64,000 nt of DNA from Tubulanus polymorphus. Lineage: Eukaryota > Animalia > Nemertea. The notes beneath the pieces were generated by a model that was not told the DNA's origin, searched no databases, and saw only the letters and a program-made list of their open reading frames with translations. Positions 36,377 to 56,030 of this stretch are shown piece by piece. The stretch covers positions 5,580,001-5,644,000 of the forward strand of contig NC_134031.1 of the NCBI RefSeq assembly GCF_964204645.1, read 5' to 3'. Each line of letters starts with the position of its first letter. Within the stretch, counting starts at the first letter, position 1. Made by a program: the position numbers and the translations under genes.

Positions 36377-36656
36377 CCTTTTTAGCGCCAACTATTTAAT
36401 TCCCGAAAGTGTTGGAGATGATTTGAAAATTTTAAAAATTCCACCTGTGTATTGAATAGCGGGCATACTGCTATTGCGCATTTACACCGCGGTGCGGTGT
36501 ATGATTAGTAGCTAATACTAAACTCAGTTTGGCAGGTTCTGCCATCTCAGAGATGGAAACTAACTACTGATTACATCAACGCTTCGCAATGCGTTTTACT
36601 AGCAAAGTCCATCAACGATTGAAACACCGCACTGCAGTGAAGATGCGCTGAAAGGG
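36377..36656. mobile_element. Non-autonomous piggyBac-like MITE
   Basis: TTAA|CCTTTTTAGCGC...GCGCTGAAAGGG|TTAA; internal similarity to the 35028 copy. Confidence 0.75.
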
Positions 36657-36824
36657 TTAAATCTGGTTCAACACCACAATGGTTGCAGTGGGTTCGTACT
36701 TGATTTAAAACAGACAAACTTATTGAACCAAATGAGTACCGGTATCGTAGAAGTTCGAACTATAAACGATGCATATAAACGTCATCTCGGCAATTTATTC
36801 CGCGCATGTTTGAAGGGATCTTAC

Positions 36825-49346: not shown

Positions 49347-49404
49347 TTAACGAACCCTCAAAATAAACTGAACTTAAGACAGTTCATTTAGTAAATAGAC
49401 CTAC

Positions 49405-49548
49405 CTCCACCGATAACGGATTCGATCGTGATGTGGGACGCGTCGATTTCTTTGGTGAATTCGCGCACCGCCTGATGAGGGTCTTCGTAGGTGTGCGGGT
49501 CGACGTACGATCGTATGGAACCGGGAGACGTGAACAACGGAACCGTCA
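49405..49548 (-). CDS. Eph: Eph receptor exon: juxtamembrane [10 protein letters not shown] motif and start of kinase
   Basis: TTATTGCAG|TG...GGAG|GTAGG; 144 nt, phase 1-1; [48 protein letters not shown] with both canonical autoinhibitory tyrosines. Confidence 0.95.
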
Positions 49549-50500
49549 CTGCAATAACAAACAAACTTCCGATTTAAAAATACTATGATAGGCATAAAAT
49601 TTGCATAAATTAGAATAAAATTAGTATCGAAACAGTAAATAGCGATACGGGAGATCATGTAGCACAAAATTGGAATCACTACTAAGTTATAGATATGAAA
49701 TATTTAATGACTACTAGCGAACATAATATCGGTCATTGCAAATAAATAATGGAACCAATTAATGAAGAAATTGAACTAATATTCCTCATTGCTTCAACAG
49801 CCGCCTGTGGCTCAGTCAGACCCACGACCCTCGAAAAATGGATTAGAAAAATAGCAGAAATCTCTGGGTTTCTACCAGCACTGTCTGCTAAGAATTATAT
49901 ACAATTCAGATCATGCAAATTTTCAAAATGAATCATCGGTTTCCCAAACTCTACTCGACGGTACATATAGGCGTTATTTTACTACGCTAACTGAAGGAAT
50001 TATCGACGTACAATATAATGGAAGGAACGAAATAAAATATTAATATTCAACAATCATGCAGCTATTATTCAGCTATAAATCGATCTTGCGTTCAGTATTT
50101 TCAAAGAACTGGTTAATTGAATATTGAAAGAACTATCGGACATGATTTTTTCATTTCCTAGAGTTTATTGATTAATAATTTAACCATTTAATGGATCTTT
50201 TAAGATTCTAATCGCGAGAAGCAGTCGAAGAATAGATCAAAAATGTAATATCTATTAGTAAAAGAGAATAACTAAGAGGGTACGTCGATCCGAGCTGGTC
50301 GGCTTATTTTTTACCGACAAGCCCGGATCGTGATCAACTACCCCGATGGTAAGTATATTCAAGGATTAAGCTTGTATAACGAGTAAACAGGACGACTAGC
50401 ACCACCTGGTGGCTACTTCAATCAGACAGAGACACACGATACATCGATTATAAAGAAAACGATGAAAGACCACCAGGTGGCGTCGTTCGTAGAAACTTAC

Positions 50501-50530
50501 AGCTGCCGTTCGGTTCTACGTGACAGTGCA
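50501..50530 (-). CDS. Eph: Candidate 30-nt juxtamembrane microexon (VHCHVEPNGS)
   Basis: CTAACAACAG|TGCACTGTCACGTAGAACCGAACGGCAGCT|GTAAGT; phase 1-1 and open; 'VHC' resembles an optional segment I recall in arthropod Eph (unverified). Confidence 0.65.
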
Positions 50531-50965
50531 CTGTTGTTAGCCATGTGAAAAGAAACGAAACGATGAATCAATAATAAACGAACGGTAGCGCCACCTAAAC
50601 CCAATAATCTTACGAGATAGAGACTACATTCGAATTGGCCTGAGCCTCGTAATGATAATTAGCTCGGCGATCCGTACAGGGTTAAGTGCGCAATTTTCTA
50701 GTTAAGACTATATAGTACCCGACCCTTCGTCGTAGTGCAGGCAATCTTCAATAAGATTACCTATAAACGAATATATATCGCGATAAACGAATTATCGCGA
50801 GTAAAACGGATTATCTCGAGAGAAACAAGATCATCCGATGAGCGCATGTTGTTATGCGTCTAAATGAATTGGATTACGTTTAAGGGATGAACGCGACGGT
50901 GAGCGTGACGCGCTAAATGACGAAATATTAAGGGTAGTAGACAGACGTAATATATGGATAATCAC

Positions 50966-50998
50966 CTTTCAGATAGGGCCACTTCCCCGTGCATGATC
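50966..50998 (-). CDS. Eph: Candidate 33-nt juxtamembrane microexon (RSCTGKWPYLK)
   Basis: Strong polypyrimidine tract TTTCTTTCGTCCACCTCTTTTTAG, donor AAG|GTGATT; phase 1-1 and open. Confidence 0.5.
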
Positions 50999-51288
50999 CT
51001 AAAAAGAGGTGGACGAAAGAAATCGAATCAGAATGTCACAAAAAAGTGCGAGGGAGAAAAATCTGGTGGTTATTTGCACAAAAATGAGGGGAAATCTCCG
51101 CCAACGGAAGTCGTGTAAGGATTAACGAGGTAATCTAGTTAAAGATGGATAAGAAAGTAAGGTGGAGCTGATTGCACTTCAACATGAGTTCCTTCACCCG
51201 GTCAACGCGACAGTAACCAAACGCAAAAGAAGTAAATTCATTTCTTTCTAAATAATGCATTCGTCAACAAGATCAGGTTCCAAACCAG

Positions 51289-51494
51289 GGGCCGGTTGCA
51301 TAGTCATGGCTTAGACTAAAGACCAGTCTAAGACCAACTTAGTTCTATAGCCAATCTAACAACTTAAGACCAGTCTTAAGTTGTTAGATTGGCTATAGAA
51401 CTAAGTTGGTCTTAGACTGGTCTTCAACAACTTAAGACCAGTCTAAAGATTTAAGACCACTTTTGGACTTAAGTCATGACTGTGCAACTGGCCC
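51289..51494. mobile_element. PIF/Harbinger-like MITE, copy 2, with internal perfect palindrome
   Basis: CAG|GGGCCGGTTGCA...TGCAACTGGCCC|CAG (3-bp CWG TSD). Confidence 0.8.
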
Positions 51495-52148
51495 CAGGAA
51501 CTACCGACGTAAAAGACTTACACCATTCAGTTTTTCTAAAACTCGAAATCTATTGTCGCATAACTGGCCCCCGGAGACCTTTAAACTTAGCCCGAACGGG
51601 GAGCATTACAAGATTTAGGTTGTAATGTCGAAACAACGAAGAATACTAGTTCGGGACGAAAATCTACGTTCATAAGTCATTGAAATATACAAAAATAAAA
51701 TCGGATGTTATATCATAAAAGTCTCTAAGAGAAAGTTCAAAAATATGAAAAAACAATGATTACGCAATCACAAAAATGAGTGACACATTGATTCCGATGG
51801 TGTGTGCTGTGGTGAACAGTGTGTGAAACAAACAACGAAATCATCAACTGTGCGAACCAGAAAACCACGAAAAATTAGCGTATGATAACTGTGTAACTAC
51901 AGCAAATAGAAATACAATAAGTTAGCCATAGATTAATTGCCACGAGAGAAGACCCACTTATATATATATGAAATTAGCGACAATCATACATATCTAAAGT
52001 GGTAATACTCTTTACAGAAGAAAAAGATACGTGAGTGTGTGTGTGTTCCGTAGTAGAGGACCTAGGAAGGGTGTGATTTATGATACGGTAACCATCCTTA
52101 TAAGATTAGATCACGATTGATAAAACGCTAAATAAACGTGTTGCGACG

Positions 52149-52439
52149 ATAATGTAGAGAGAATCCCACAATAATAACTAAAAACACAGTGCGAAAATGT
52201 TACCAGCGCTAGTGTAGTTTATTCGACTATATTCTAATAGTCATCTTCAGGAATACTGATTTTCCCTTAGTTTGTATCACTTATGATTTGTTCCAGATTG
52301 TATATATATATTTCACAAGTTCTGTTGAAAAATCAGTATTCCTGAAGATAGTGGAAGCATCGAATAAACTACCAGTTCAAGGAAACATTTTCAGGACTGT
52401 TGTTCGTTATTATTGAGGTATTTATTCTCTCTACATTAT
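52149..52439. mobile_element. About 290-bp foldback element
   Basis: Nested inverted blocks ATAATGTAGAGAGAAT, TAGTTTATTCGA and ATCTTCAGGAATACTGATTTT, each with its reverse complement in mirror order. Confidence 0.7.
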
Positions 52440-52588
52440 AAGATTGGATCTGTCACGCAGTTTTTCACAAATAAAATTATCGAGACTAGGATGGATGCTG
52501 CATCATCGTATAGGAGAGAGTTTGAAACCACCGATAGATCGGAAAAAACCAGTTAATATTTGAACTGTTTCTTTTTTTGTTTACTCAC

Positions 52589-52609
52589 TCAACGGGCCCT
52601 TTCCAATAG
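52589..52609 (-). CDS. Eph: Candidate 21-nt juxtamembrane microexon (TIGKGPL)
   Basis: TGTTTAACAG|CTATTGGAAAGGGCCCGTTGA|GTGAGT; phase 1-1 and open; branch-like TGCTAAC and UG/YCAY-rich sequence upstream. Confidence 0.5.
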   Translation of the reverse strand, partial: LLERAR

Positions 52610-52888
52610 CTGTTAAACATACACAAAACACATGTACACATTTTACGATGATGATGATGATGTTAGCAAAGAGAAGTGTTAGTTTGATCTCGTTTTATTG
52701 AGAATCGTTTTCAATCTCCTTCCGAGACATTCACACGACAGATAGGTAGAAACGGAAAAAATGATGACCAATTCGAATATCACTGGACCACTGAAATGAA
52801 TTGGTCCATTCTGAAGTTGGGTATTATGACCCAATTTAGCTCAGATATCATGACAGCACATGCTTGGTCCATTCTTTTCCCCGCAAAC

Positions 52889-53254
52889 CAGGGTTCTTAT
52901 GGGTTTTTTATTTTCCCTATACCTTTTCCATACCCGGATCATAAATTCTCCATACCCTTAAGTTACACATACCCAACCTAGAACAGGCAATGTGAAGGTC
53001 TGTTCAAAGCAATTAAGTGCCAATTATCAATACAATTGATGAAGTGTTTTCATAAGGTTTGTTATCAAATGTGTAGTAAGACATTAAGGCATATAGCCTA
53101 AAATTCAAAATAGAAGGGAAATTTTATTTTAAGACCATTTTATGATTTTCCCATACCTTTTCAAAATATAACCATAGAGAAAATAACAAAATGTCCATAG
53201 CTTTTCCCAGGGCCTGGAAAAAATTCCCATTTTCCAAAACCCGTAAGAACCCTG
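52889..53254. mobile_element. MITE with CAGGGTTCTTA termini, copy 2
   Basis: CAGGGTTCTTATGGG...CCCGTAAGAACCCTG. Confidence 0.65.
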
Positions 53255-55968
53255 TTAAACGACTAGATTTAGGCTTATATTTTTGTTTTAAGTACACAAA
53301 AGCTAAACCGCGACGGACATTTCTGAACTGCGAATACCTAGAAAAAGTTTGCACGGTTTTTTTCTCTCCGTCGTTTCGAATAAAGAATCGACGATCCAAA
53401 TCGCCTACAAGAGTGAGAGCCTCGGAGGAACTGAACATTTCAGAGCGATCGTCGCTCATTATCGATTTGATAAAATCGATCGATCGTCAATTTGATCATT
53501 TAATTTGAGATCTGGTTTATGTAAAAACACTCGATAAAGGTTAAATCAAACGAGCCGAATTAACCACGAGAACTCCAGCAAGCAGCAGCCGAGATTCTGA
53601 GGACAACTGATCAGCGTATTACACCGTCACATGAGGTTATAATACACTTATAATTGATCAGTATCGACGGGAGATAAATCTCAAATCGATCATCAACGAC
53701 GGATTACAACTACGCAGCGAACGCTGTCTGCTCCTACACGCGAGGCTTCACAGAATAAAACCATCGGCAACAGGTGAAAATAATTCAGGTCGTTTATTCA
53801 GACTCCCTGATACTGATCAGAATTTCAGGCATATTCAGCCATAATAGAATTAAAAAGCTTTTCGTACTGAGATGAACCGTGTCGGATTCGATGAGTGATC
53901 TAGAGCCGATTCCTAGAATGTGGGGCAAGTTGTACAATCCGACTTCAAGATTGTTGTCCTGAAATACCTCAACTGGTTGAGCACCGCTAAGGGCAGTACA
54001 AGCAAGTCCCAGTTTTCGTGTTTCCTTACGGGGAAAGAAACTTTTGCCCAAGAAAGCGAGGCTTTGCACCCATGGCCCCTGGATTGACGAGACCAGTCAG
54101 AAAGACTCTTCGTAATCTTGAAGACCATTCTAATCCTTTGGTCGAATCACTAATATAACAAACTTTTTGGGCTTCAATCTGGGCATAGGTCAGCTTTGAG
54201 GCACAAGTAGGTCATGTTATATAGGTCGGTTGCAGTAACTAGGTGTGCGACCCATCTCTTACATACATCATTGAATCCTTGACACCTGTTGATCATACAT
54301 CGAATTTCATTTACGGTACTGTTTTCTAATGCAGCGCTATTCCAACACAAAACCTTGAACCGAAAGCAACCAAAATGGAACGGTACTGTTTTCCAATACA
54401 GCATTATTCCAGCAGATAACCTCGCGTCGAAAGCGACCGAAATGGAACAGTTCGAGAGAGGGCTGGGACACCGGGAAATTTTCAGCACTCGGCATTCACG
54501 GTTAAGTACTACTCGACTGCAAAACGCGAGCGAAAGCACTAGTCATGGGGCTGTCATTCAGGAAATGACCATTCATATAGCGCAGGACTGCTCGGTTTCT
54601 AAGCAACACAGTAGTCGTCGTCTTGACATGTATTTCTGGTTGTCGGAGTCGCTGTTTTTTTTTTCCGCCTGACAACTACGAGTAGCTACACCGCGTACAT
54701 ACACACCGACATATACACACACGGGGGACACGACGACGCTGCAACCAGTGAACCATCGATCATTGAAGTTATATTAACAGGCAGGTGGAAAAGTAACTGG
54801 CCAGCGCACGCCTGAAAAAACCGGCCGCGATCAATCACACCGCGCGCGACCGACGATGTGACAGTTTCATTAACTTCTCGCATTCGAGGCTCGGGCGAAC
54901 CTCAAATTTTTAAAAGCTGCATCGATTACGCGTTGCGGCCAATTTCGCGGAATGACGTAACATTTCATGAAAATATCATCAGGTATCGTGTACGACCATC
55001 TAATCATACCAGATCATCCGACTCCATGAGCCGCGATCACACGAAGATGATTTGGCCTGGACCGAATCTGCGCAGATTTGGGCGTAAACCACTCACTCGA
55101 TACTGAATAAAACGATATGCTTTCAACTGTTTTCTATAATCAGAAAAGACACTTCAGTTTTTCTCATCCTACTGTTGGATTTAGACTCGATAGAGATTTG
55201 ACAGCTCTATAAAAATGAACGTGAAACTGAATTGAGTCGACGCTTCTTAAATCATAGTCGAGCACGAACACACTCAGAGTCAGTCGAGCAGACACACGGG
55301 TCGTATCGATCCGGCATCAGAGAAAAATTGCGCCGTGTATTTTACAATCGTCATCATTAACAATCATGCATTGCTATCATATACACTATATATATATAAA
55401 AATACATATATATATACTTAAACATATACGTAGAGAAATATGTTACTGATTTTCATGCTTCAAAAACATCATTTGCAGCGAGACATGTATTGATTGAAGT
55501 CGGTATTTTCTTTTTCATAAAACTGGATCGAGTCTGAATTTGATGATCCAGTTTTATGAAGAAAAAAATCTTTTTCAAGCCGTGTAGAATAGCCTATCCC
55601 GATGATAACTGGGATTTCCGAATGAAAATTAAAGAAAAAAAATCAGGGCTGCCAACCTCTGAAAAGTGCTGTAATGAATTGAATTTTTGTTCGCTAACAT
55701 TTCATTGAAATATGAAAGAAAATGTTCGAATTAATCATTTCTCAAAACTAAGATCCTCAGTTGCATCTTTCATATTTCTGTACGCATCAAACAAATCGAA
55801 TCAGTATTTCTTGGTATGAAATAGTAGCAAATACTGAAAATCAGGAACAGTTGGCAGCTTTAGAAATACTTATTCTTCATTATCACCGGGATTGAGCTAG
55901 CACTGTAGCCCAAAAAACATTAAGATGCATATTTTTGTGAGGATGGTTTTTCTGTCCATAAAACTTAC

Positions 55969-56030
55969 TATTCGTGTATTGCAGGTTATCGCAATCTCCA
56001 GGATTCTTTTCGCTACAACCTTGGTTATTC
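55969..56030 (-). CDS. Eph: Eph receptor juxtamembrane exon (not in ORF track)
   Basis: GTATTTTAG|G...AATA|GTAAGT; 62 nt, phase 2 to 1, exactly the phase bridge needed; encodes (R)NNQGCSEKNPGDCDNLQYTN, resembling the 'C.KK.PSDCDTLEY.N' segment I recall from protostome Eph receptors. Confidence 0.85.

What the first reader, a model, noticed from the sequence alone, without database searches (positions are those of the whole stretch)
50501..52609. Array of three frame-preserving microexons in the Eph juxtamembrane region (up to 8 isoforms)
Seen: between the 62-nt exon (ends phase 1) and the [10 protein letters not shown] exon (starts phase 1) lie three AG/GT-bounded segments of 21, 33 and 30 nt. 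All are multiples of 3 and open in phase 1, and every possible junction codon (ACT, AGA, ATG, GTG, TTG) is sense. They would insert TIGKGPL, RSCTGKWPYLK and VHCHVEPNGS. Known: the Eph juxtamembrane segment autoinhibits the kinase, and neural microexons remodel signalling proteins. Inference: a combinatorial splice cassette that tunes linker length and adds Cys/His/Tyr residues. None appears in the ORF track.
Basis: partly seen in the sequence, partly recalled or inferred. Interest (0 to 1): 0.8.

Follow-up and report, generated by a model that had tools for sequence, protein, structure and literature searches.

The report
Conserved alternative microexon in Eph gene
Of three tiny candidate exons in a ribbon worm's Eph receptor gene, one is the unannotated counterpart of an optional exon that other protostome animals also keep at this exact spot, a second is plausible, and the third looks like chance.

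Summary
The window holds the only detected Eph receptor gene of the ribbon worm Tubulanus polymorphus, on the minus strand. All three segments exist exactly as described: 21, 33 and 30 nt, AG/GT-bounded, open in phase 1.

The pattern alone is not special. The same 6.4-kb intron holds 183 such segments.

The 30-nt segment (50530-50501) is real in an evolutionary sense. It is the reciprocal best match of a 45-nt alternative exon annotated in Lineus longissimus Eph isoforms X1/X3. It has the same phase and sits last before the [10 protein letters not shown] exon. It carries the motif HC..[VL][ED][PH]..NG[GS], also found in inserts at this junction in molluscs and a brachiopod. Arthropod inserts there align only loosely.

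The 33-nt segment has constitutive-grade splice sites, expected 0.01-0.08 times per intron by chance. It matches the length and relative position of a second Lineus microexon but shares no sequence with it: plausible, about 50%.

The 21-nt segment cannot be told from chance, about 15-20%.

No RNA covered the locus, and the only RefSeq model uses the direct junction. Inclusion and "8 isoforms" are therefore untested.

Verdict: an unannotated member of a widespread protostome Eph juxtamembrane microexon system. That system is visible in database isoforms, but I found no paper describing it.

The parts
55969..56030 (-). Constitutive 62-nt exon after the transmembrane exon (NNQGCSEKNPGDCDNLQYTN). 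It ends in phase 1 on A.
   Evidence: Spliced in RefSeq product P0001. Its homologs in Lineus (L002:91424-91485) and the chiton Liolophura are also exactly 62 nt.
52589..52609 (-). m21, a 21-nt candidate microexon (IGKGPL). It is unsupported and cannot be told from chance.
   Evidence: Splice scores are acceptor 1.9 and donor 5.0. Segments of this grade are expected 0.47-1.7 times per intron. It has no counterpart in the Lineus intron above the antisense control.
50966..50998 (-). m33, a 33-nt candidate microexon (SCTGKWPYLK). It is a plausible second alternative exon.
   Evidence: Splice scores are acceptor 6.2 and donor 8.0, inside the range of the gene's constitutive exons. Segments of this grade are expected 0.012-0.075 times per intron. 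It has the same length and relative position as Lineus microexon b (L002:92068-92100) but no sequence similarity to it.
50501..50530 (-). m30, a 30-nt microexon (HCHVEPNGS). It is the ortholog of the conserved class-c alternative juxtamembrane exon of protostome Ephs.
   Evidence: It is the top hit of the Lineus c peptide in all six frames of the 64-kb window. It is also the reciprocal best hit among splice-compatible candidates, scoring 35 against 14-24. It shares the motif in the MAFFT alignment, the acceptor context CTAAC..AG and the donor T|GTAAGT with Lineus.
49405..49548 (-). Constitutive juxtamembrane exon (TVPLF...[10 protein letters not shown]...GGG). It starts in phase 1.
   Evidence: It is 78% identical in DNA to the Lineus exon.
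50402..50412 (.). Second copy of the palindromic 11-mer CCACCWGGTGG, downstream of m30.
   Evidence: The two copies are the only ones in the window, against 0.24 expected. They pair in the centroid RNA fold.
50470..50482 (.). First copy of the palindromic box, 19 nt downstream of the m30 donor. It is complementary to an upstream box.
   Evidence: The 8-nt complement AGGTGGCG/CGCCACCT brackets the exon. Lineus has AGGTGG 77 nt upstream and CCACCT 65 nt downstream of its c exon.
50589..50596 (-). Upstream box AGGTGGCG, 66 nt before m30.

Best explanation
The 6.4-kb intron between the 62-nt exon and the [10 protein letters not shown] exon of the Tubulanus polymorphus Eph receptor gene contains at least one genuine alternative microexon that the annotation misses. 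That exon is m30 (50530-50501). It is the shortened ortholog of an optional exon that protostome Eph genes keep at exactly this junction. When included, it inserts about 10 residues (HCHVEPNGS plus junction codons) between the membrane-proximal Cys-containing segment and the TVPLF...YxDPxTYEDP segment. That second segment carries the two regulatory tyrosines. By inference from vertebrate Eph structures, the insert lengthens and re-decorates the tether of the autoinhibitory juxtamembrane segment without changing frame. m33 (50998-50966) is probably a second, lineage-specific cassette exon, analogous in position and length to Lineus exon b. m21 is most likely a chance AG/GT segment. Shown here: the sequence features, the orthology and the conservation. 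Inferred: actual inclusion in Tubulanus mRNA, tissue specificity and effect on signalling.
For: P0001, the RefSeq 'ephrin type-A receptor 7-like' protein of Tubulanus polymorphus, is 100% identical to the window's exons and fixes the gene model and the flanking exons. Lineus longissimus RefSeq isoforms differ only at this junction: X4 is direct, X2 adds AGADLGSIIRKL and X1/X3 add VHCHGVDPNLHLTGGL. In the Lineus genome these are separate phase-1 exons of 33 and 45 nt, in the order ex62-b-c-JM. With the Lineus c peptide, m30 is the best hit of all six frames of the 64-kb window (score 40, 7 SD above the mean). It is also the reciprocal best hit among 205 (Tubulanus) and 56 (Lineus) splice-compatible candidates, scoring 35 against next-best 14-22 and antisense controls 17-24. 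The rest of the two introns shares no alignable DNA, so the similarity implies selection. The chiton Liolophura has the same 62-nt exon and a 42-nt c exon in the same phase, ending T|GTAAGT. Forty-nine distinct inserts occur at this junction across protostome Ephs, and the c-type inserts of molluscs and a brachiopod align on HC..[VL][ED][PH]..NG[GS] together with m30. For m33, splice scores are in the constitutive range and segments of that grade are expected 0.012-0.075 times per intron.
Against: There is no RNA evidence. The one putative RNA run of this species has no contig on the region. The only annotated product skips all three segments. m30 has weak splice sites (acceptor -1.4, donor 5.9) and is 15 nt shorter than the Lineus exon, so it could be a decaying relic. 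The six-frame scan's second-best hit (score 37, in another intron) shows that short-peptide scores alone are not decisive. The case therefore rests on score combined with position, phase and boundaries. m33 and m21 have no detectable homolog. The splice scoring uses a generic matrix with little power: the annotated Lineus b exon scores only -2.9/3.0.
Confidence: 0.8

Rival explanations
1. All three segments are real cassette exons used combinatorially, giving up to 8 juxtamembrane isoforms.
For: Arrays of up to three inserts at this junction exist in database isoforms of other protostomes. Tenebrio X6 (P0244) has three in a row, and ticks and crabs combine b and c types. All junction codons are sense. 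Real microexons here can have very weak splice sites, as Lineus b shows, so m21 cannot be excluded.
Against: m21-grade segments are expected 0.5-1.7 times per intron by chance, and m21 has no homolog. The four Lineus isoforms show none, b or c, but never b plus c. There is no RNA evidence.
Confidence: 0.08
2. All three are chance pseudo-exons, and the gene makes only the direct junction of the RefSeq model.
For: The intron holds 183 equivalent segments. The only annotated product uses the direct junction. m30 and m21 have chance-level splice scores.
Against: m30 is the reciprocal best hit of an annotated Lineus exon in the right intron, order, phase and boundaries. The introns are otherwise unalignable.
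Confidence: 0.07
3. m30 is homologous to the conserved exon but is a relic that Tubulanus no longer splices in.
For: It is 15 nt shorter than in Lineus. Its acceptor is weak, with the branch-point-like CTAAC only 6-10 nt from the AG. It is absent from the RefSeq model.
Against: The frame, the absence of stops, both splice dinucleotides, the GTAAGT donor and the terminal residues are all retained, while the surrounding intron kept no alignable similarity between the two worms. Lineus has the same close CTAAC..AG arrangement at its annotated exon.
Confidence: 0.1

Closest known systems
Lineus longissimus Eph receptor isoforms X1/X3 (XP_064643189.1, XP_064643191.1; P0269, P0268): 45-nt alternative exon c
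   Same: It lies in the same intron, is the last microexon before the JM exon and is in the same phase (1-1). It shares the start HCH, the core V[ED]PN and the end G[GS] plus a Leu junction codon. It shares the CTAAC..AG acceptor context and the T|GTAAGT donor. The distance to the JM exon is similar, 941 against 952 nt.
   Different: The Tubulanus exon is 30 nt rather than 45 nt and lacks the LHLT stretch. With the 62-nt exon ending in A rather than G, its first codon reads Met unless it is preceded by m33. The Tubulanus exon is not annotated and has no RNA evidence.
Class-c juxtamembrane inserts of mollusc, brachiopod and arthropod Ephs, for example VVHCPPLEPHMNGGL in Mytilus and VVHCAPLEHHFNGGL in Liolophura
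   Same: The position and phase are the same. The chiton genome confirms a separate 42-nt exon after a 62-nt exon. The motif HC..[VL][ED][PH]..NG[GS] is shared with molluscs and Lingula.
   Different: Those exons are longer, at 42-57 nt. Arthropod versions (for example VVPALEHPPIVQTARL) align only loosely. Many of these species also have a 6-nt alternative donor that adds GE, which Tubulanus lacks.
Lineus exon b (AGADLGSIIRKL, 33 nt) and other b-type inserts: cephalopod GLSRLIWADRMGEK, crustacean GLIVTFSK, tick GKK
   Same: m33 has the same length as Lineus b (33 nt), the same phase and the same position between the 62-nt exon and exon c.
   Different: m33 and m21 show no sequence similarity to any b-type insert above control level. 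b-type inserts are themselves poorly conserved between phyla.
Juxtamembrane splice variants of vertebrate Eph receptors (recalled from memory, not tested here), such as the neural 16-residue insertion form of chicken EphB2/Cek5 and EphA7 variants
   Same: They are in-frame insertions in the juxtamembrane region of an Eph receptor produced by alternative splicing.
   Different: Homology of the inserted exons was not examined. Vertebrate sequences were not compared here.
Neural microexon programme driven by Srrm234/SRRM4 (eMIC domain)
   Same: These are very short, frame-preserving cassette exons in a neuronal signalling or guidance receptor.
   Different: By my reading of the flank printed (not a tool search), there is no UGC in the 30 nt upstream of the m30, m33 or m21 acceptors. 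Tissue specificity is unknown. Membership was not established.

Membership tests
Eph receptor tyrosine kinase | The domain set: fibronectin III repeats, EphA2-type transmembrane segment, tyrosine kinase domain and SAM domain. | tested here: met
   The precomputed Pfam list for P0001 includes PF00041, PF14575, PF07714 and PF00536. The exons map to the window. The ligand-binding domain is missing from the truncated 603-aa model and was not looked for.
Eph receptor tyrosine kinase | The juxtamembrane double-tyrosine motif YxDPxTYEDP. | tested here: met
   [10 protein letters not shown] is encoded at 49548-49405.
Conserved protostome Eph juxtamembrane microexon, class c | It lies in the intron between the 62-nt post-transmembrane exon and the TVPLF/YxDPxTYEDP exon, as the last cassette before the latter. 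| tested here: met
   the order is the same in Tubulanus, Lineus and the chiton.
Conserved protostome Eph juxtamembrane microexon, class c | It enters and leaves in phase 1, its length is a multiple of 3, it is bounded by AG/GT, and its last base plus TG gives Leu or Met. | tested here: met
   m30 is 30 nt, and T plus TG gives TTG (Leu). The Lineus (45 nt) and chiton (42 nt) exons also end in T before GTAAGT.
Conserved protostome Eph juxtamembrane microexon, class c | The sequence motif HC..[VL][ED][PH]..NG[GS]. | tested here: met
   MAFFT alignment. Reciprocal best hit with Lineus. Top hit of the six-frame window scan. The Tubulanus version is shortened.
Conserved protostome Eph juxtamembrane microexon, class c | Alternative inclusion in mRNA. 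| not testable with these tools
   Only one putative RNA run was found, and it has no contig on the locus. Skipping is represented by P0001.
Srrm234/eMIC-dependent neural microexon | A UGC motif close upstream of the 3' splice site. | tested here: not met
   This is my reading of the flanks printed, not a tool search. I saw no TGC in the 30 nt upstream of the m30, m33 or m21 acceptors.
Srrm234/eMIC-dependent neural microexon | Neural-enriched inclusion. | not testable with these tools
   There are no RNA data for the locus.

The most novel reading that the evidence does not exclude
Protostome Eph receptors share an ancient array of optional juxtamembrane microexons: one conserved exon (class c) plus fast-evolving ones (class b and others). 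The array would tune the tether of the autoinhibitory segment. In Tubulanus it would comprise m30, m33 and possibly m21. In nemerteans, inclusion of the conserved exon would be controlled by complementary intronic boxes (AGGTGG upstream, CCACCT downstream, with a competing second palindrome in Tubulanus) that loop the exon out. I found no paper describing such a system in four literature searches.
Probability: 0.12. Interest if true: 0.6.

Novelty: new member of a known kind. Interest (0 to 1): 0.36.

Why it matters
The finding corrects the annotation of the Eph receptor gene of Tubulanus polymorphus, whose current model is truncated and has a single isoform. It also shows that an alternative exon of only 30-45 nt has been kept at one junction of the Eph juxtamembrane region across nemerteans, molluscs and a brachiopod, with loosely similar inserts in arthropods. 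That region controls kinase autoinhibition, so the optional insert is a candidate ancient switch for Eph forward signalling. With one Eph gene per genome in these invertebrates, isoform-specific function would be easy to test. The system is visible in automatic RefSeq isoforms, but I found no description of it in the papers I could search.

Tried and rejected
**RNA evidence.** The look-up of sequencing runs returned three DNA-like holders and one putative RNA run of the same species label. Read laying placed no contig of that run on 49400-55399. This is no proof of silence. I chose the stretch to include the 144-nt JM exon rather than the 62-nt exon because of the 6,000-letter limit.

**Polymorphism in the DNA runs.** No variant falls in any of the three segments. 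Variant density, roughly 1 per 115-280 nt, is too low to say anything about 21-33-nt targets.

**Closer relatives or transcript fragments.** A word search with the JM exon found nothing above 85% identity. The P0001 cluster has one member.

**Intron-to-intron blastn, Lineus against Tubulanus.** Only the two constitutive exons align. Homology of m30 shows only at the peptide level.

**Mollusc c peptides as queries.** They did not pick m30 out of the window. Only the nemertean query does.

**RNA folding around m30 and Lineus exon c.** Neither region folds better than shuffles, with z of -0.98 and +0.92. The B:C hairpin in Tubulanus is the only stable element.

**Tenebrio three-insert isoform.** Its locus is not on record.

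**Literature.** Four searches and one paper read found no description of invertebrate Eph juxtamembrane microexons.

I did not build or search any joined spliced model containing the microexons.

Full report
**What is there**

The finding lies in a minus-strand Eph receptor gene.
- The 62-nt exon is 56030-55969. It encodes NNQGCSEKNPGDCDNLQYTN and ends in phase 1 on A.
- m21 is 52609-52589, m33 is 50998-50966 and m30 is 50530-50501.
- The juxtamembrane (JM) exon is 49548-49405. It encodes TVPLF...[10 protein letters not shown] and starts in phase 1.
- Each candidate follows an AG and precedes a GT, and all junction codons are sense.

A protein search with the JM exon returned P0001, which is 603 aa and 100% identical. 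Its source name is 'ephrin type-A receptor 7-like [Tubulanus polymorphus]', XP_074655929.1. The organism is therefore a palaeonemertean ribbon worm. Earlier notes of this scan had already called the genome a ribbon worm. Only one locus in the 268-Mb assembly matches the JM exon.

Mapping P0001 back onto the window gives ten exact junctions, including a direct 55969-to-49548 junction. The only annotated product therefore skips all three segments. It carries no isoform label, and its cluster has a single member.

**Is the pattern more than chance?**

As a pattern, it is not. The 6,420-nt intron holds 183 AG..GT segments of 9-51 nt that are multiples of three and open in phase 1. The density is about 27 per kb on either strand of the window and in 514 kb of strand-bases sampled from six contigs of the same genome.

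I scored splice sites with a crude generic matrix:

| Exon or candidate | Acceptor score | Donor score |
|---|---|---|
| Constitutive exons of this gene | -0.4 to 9.8 | 6.5 to 11.8 |
| m33 | 6.2 | 8.0 |
| m21 | 1.9 | 5.0 |
| m30 | -1.4 | 5.9 |
| Lineus exon b (annotated) | -2.9 | 3.0 |

The number of segments at least as good, expected per intron of this size from the same-genome background, is:

| Candidate | Both scores thresholded | Summed score |
|---|---|---|
| m33 | 0.012 | 0.075 |
| m21 | 0.47 | 1.7 |
| m30 | 1.0 | 5.1 |

On splice sites alone only m33 is unusual. The method also has little power, because the annotated Lineus exon b scores very low. All three candidates lie in single-copy DNA. 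The intron is otherwise studded with high-copy repeats (depth table).

**RNA evidence**

The single run search found three DNA-like holders and one possible RNA run of the same species label. Laying all four on 49400-55399 put no contig of the possible RNA run on the stretch. No RNA evidence exists here, either for or against inclusion. The DNA runs show no variant inside any of the three segments, but variant density is too low for that to mean anything.

**Comparative evidence**

This is where the finding is decided. I pulled the JM region out of about 110 protostome Eph proteins found with P0001 residues 150-260. I also pulled it out of the isoform sets of ten clusters. The junction between the '...CDxLxYxN' exon and the 'xT[VMT]PLF...[10 protein letters not shown]' exon is a hot spot of optional inserts, with 49 distinct inserts found. 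They fall into recognisable classes:
- **Class c.** This is VVHCPPLEPHMNGGL in mussels, VVHCAPLEHHFNGGL in a chiton and VLHCPPLEPHINGSM in a clam. It is VQYPPPVIVDTHMNGSL in Lingula and VIQYPPLEHHINGGYGGL in gastropods. Looser arthropod forms include VVPALEHPPIVQTARL and VHHSLDNPPIVTTHTNV.
- **Class b.** This is short and fast-evolving: GKK in ticks, GLIVTFSK in crustaceans and GLSRLIWADRMGEK in cephalopods.
- **A 6-nt 'GE' extension.** This comes from a tandem donor.

One beetle isoform has three inserts in a row (P0244), and ticks and crabs combine b and c.

The other ribbon worm with RefSeq isoforms is Lineus longissimus. It has X4 = direct junction, X2 = +AGADLGSIIRKL and X1/X3 = +VHCHGVDPNLHLTGGL.

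I fetched the Lineus gene (L002) and located these pieces:
- a 62-nt exon at 91424-91485, the same length as in Tubulanus;
- a 33-nt exon b at 92068-92100;
- a 45-nt exon c at 92856-92900;
- the JM exon starting at 93842.

All junctions are in phase 1.

**m30 is the ortholog of Lineus exon c**

Several observations agree:
- With the Lineus c peptide as query, the best local alignment in all six frames of the 64-kb window is exactly m30. It scores 40, against a mean of 13.7 and an SD of 3.6. The next hits, 37 and 35, lie elsewhere.
- Among candidates with compatible splice sites and phase, the match is reciprocal-best. m30 against the Lineus intron scores 35, with next-best 14 and antisense control 17. 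Lineus c against the Tubulanus intron scores 35, with next-best 22 and antisense control 24.
- The two exons share the peptide start HCH, the core V[ED]PN and the end G[GS] followed by a Leu junction codon.
- They also share a CTAAC..AG acceptor context and a T|GTAAGT donor.
- They sit 952 and 941 nt upstream of the JM exon respectively.
- The rest of the two introns shares nothing that blastn can align. Only the two constitutive exons come up. Retained similarity at m30 therefore argues for purifying selection.
- The chiton Liolophura has the same 62-nt exon, here with the tandem GE donor. It also has a separate 42-nt c exon in the same phase, again ending T|GTAAGT.
- A MAFFT alignment of residues encoded wholly inside the exon places m30 on the shared motif HC..[VL][ED][PH]..NG[GS] with Lineus, molluscs and Lingula.

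I put the probability that m30 is a genuine, selected alternative exon at about 0.8-0.9. The remaining doubt is that it may be a relic, because it is 15 nt shorter than in Lineus and has weak splice sites.

**m33 and m21**

Neither has a counterpart in the Lineus intron above the antisense control. Lineus exon b likewise has none in Tubulanus. Neither resembles any of the 49 inserts convincingly.

m33 has constitutive-grade splice sites, which are rare by chance. It is 33 nt like Lineus b and sits between the 62-nt exon and exon c, as b-type exons do. Spliced to m30, it restores the Val codon (GTG) that other species have before HC. I rate it about 0.5.

m21 is at chance level on every measure I could apply. 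Because real microexons here can have very weak sites, I leave it at 0.15-0.2.

A word search for short transcript-derived fragments close to Tubulanus found nothing above 85% identity. No nearer relative was available to test the two candidates.

**How it most likely works**

It is shown that the inserts are in-frame. It is also shown that they lie between the membrane-proximal segment encoded by the 62-nt exon and the segment that carries the two juxtamembrane tyrosines.

The following is inferred from established knowledge of vertebrate Eph receptors, recalled and not tested here. The unphosphorylated juxtamembrane segment packs on the kinase and inhibits it. Optional residues just N-terminal of that segment would change the length and chemistry of its tether to the membrane. 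The conserved c motif may also add a docking site. Which tissues include it is unknown.

No UGC element of the Srrm234/eMIC type lies within 30 nt upstream of the three acceptors. That is my own reading, so I do not file the exons under that programme.

**A possible control element**

Two copies of the palindrome CCACCWGGTGG lie at 50470-50480 and 50402-50412. They are the only ones in the window, against 0.24 expected, and they form the only stable hairpin in the predicted fold.

The first copy is also complementary over 8 nt to AGGTGGCG, 66 nt upstream of the exon. Lineus has AGGTGG 77 nt upstream and CCACCT 65 nt downstream of its c exon, while the chiton has neither. This would fit an exon-looping pairing with a competing downstream hairpin. 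However, the folds are no better than shuffles, so I report it only as a lead.

**Comparison with what is known, and novelty**

Class-c and class-b inserts are present in automatic RefSeq isoforms of many protostomes, so the kind of element is on record in databases. Four literature searches and one review of Eph evolution yielded no description of it.

For Tubulanus the exon is unannotated. I classify the finding as a new member of a known kind.

Noticed in passing
window 50402-50412, 50470-50482 and 50589-50596; L002 92774-92784 and 92965-92975: Two copies of the palindrome CCACCWGGTGG lie just downstream of m30, and a complementary AGGTGGCG lies upstream. Lineus has AGGTGG upstream and CCACCT downstream of its orthologous exon, while the chiton has neither. 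This could be an exon-looping pairing with a competitor hairpin, but the folds are not better than shuffles.
   Followed up: partly
window 32446-59561 (minus strand); protein P0001: The only RefSeq model of this Eph gene is 603 aa and starts inside a fibronectin III repeat, whereas other invertebrate Ephs are about 1,000 aa. The ligand-binding part is missing from the model, so the annotation looks truncated.
   Followed up: no
window 51200-51600, 52000-52400, 53000-53400 and 55000-55200: Very high contig depth in the DNA runs (up to about 2.6e5) marks high-copy repeats inside the JM intron. The one at about 51300-51500 is an inverted-repeat, MITE-like element with many rearranged copies. These repeats probably explain why the intron is 6.4 kb here and 2.4 kb in Lineus.
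   Followed up: no
window 55969: The 62-nt exon ends in A in Tubulanus, whereas its Lineus and chiton homologs end in G and other species show Val at this junction. The direct junction codon is therefore ATG (Met) instead of the usual GTG (Val). Only splicing through m33 restores Val before HC or TVPLF.
   Followed up: partly
L023 about 51721-51733, and isoform pairs: Many molluscs, Lingula and arthropods have a tandem donor (G|GTGAGG|GT) that optionally adds Gly-Glu at the end of the 62-nt exon. Neither nemertean has it.
   Followed up: partly
window 50531-50540 and L002 92846-92855: In both nemerteans a branch-point-like CTAAC sits only 6-10 nt before the acceptor AG of the c exon, with the pyrimidine tract upstream of it. 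This is an unusual and conserved 3' splice-site layout.
   Followed up: no
window 36580-36699 (minus strand, frame 1): The second-best six-frame match to the Lineus c peptide (THCNHCGVEPDLTLSAHLH, score 37) lies in a kinase-domain intron. I took it as a chance hit and did not examine its splice context.
   Followed up: no
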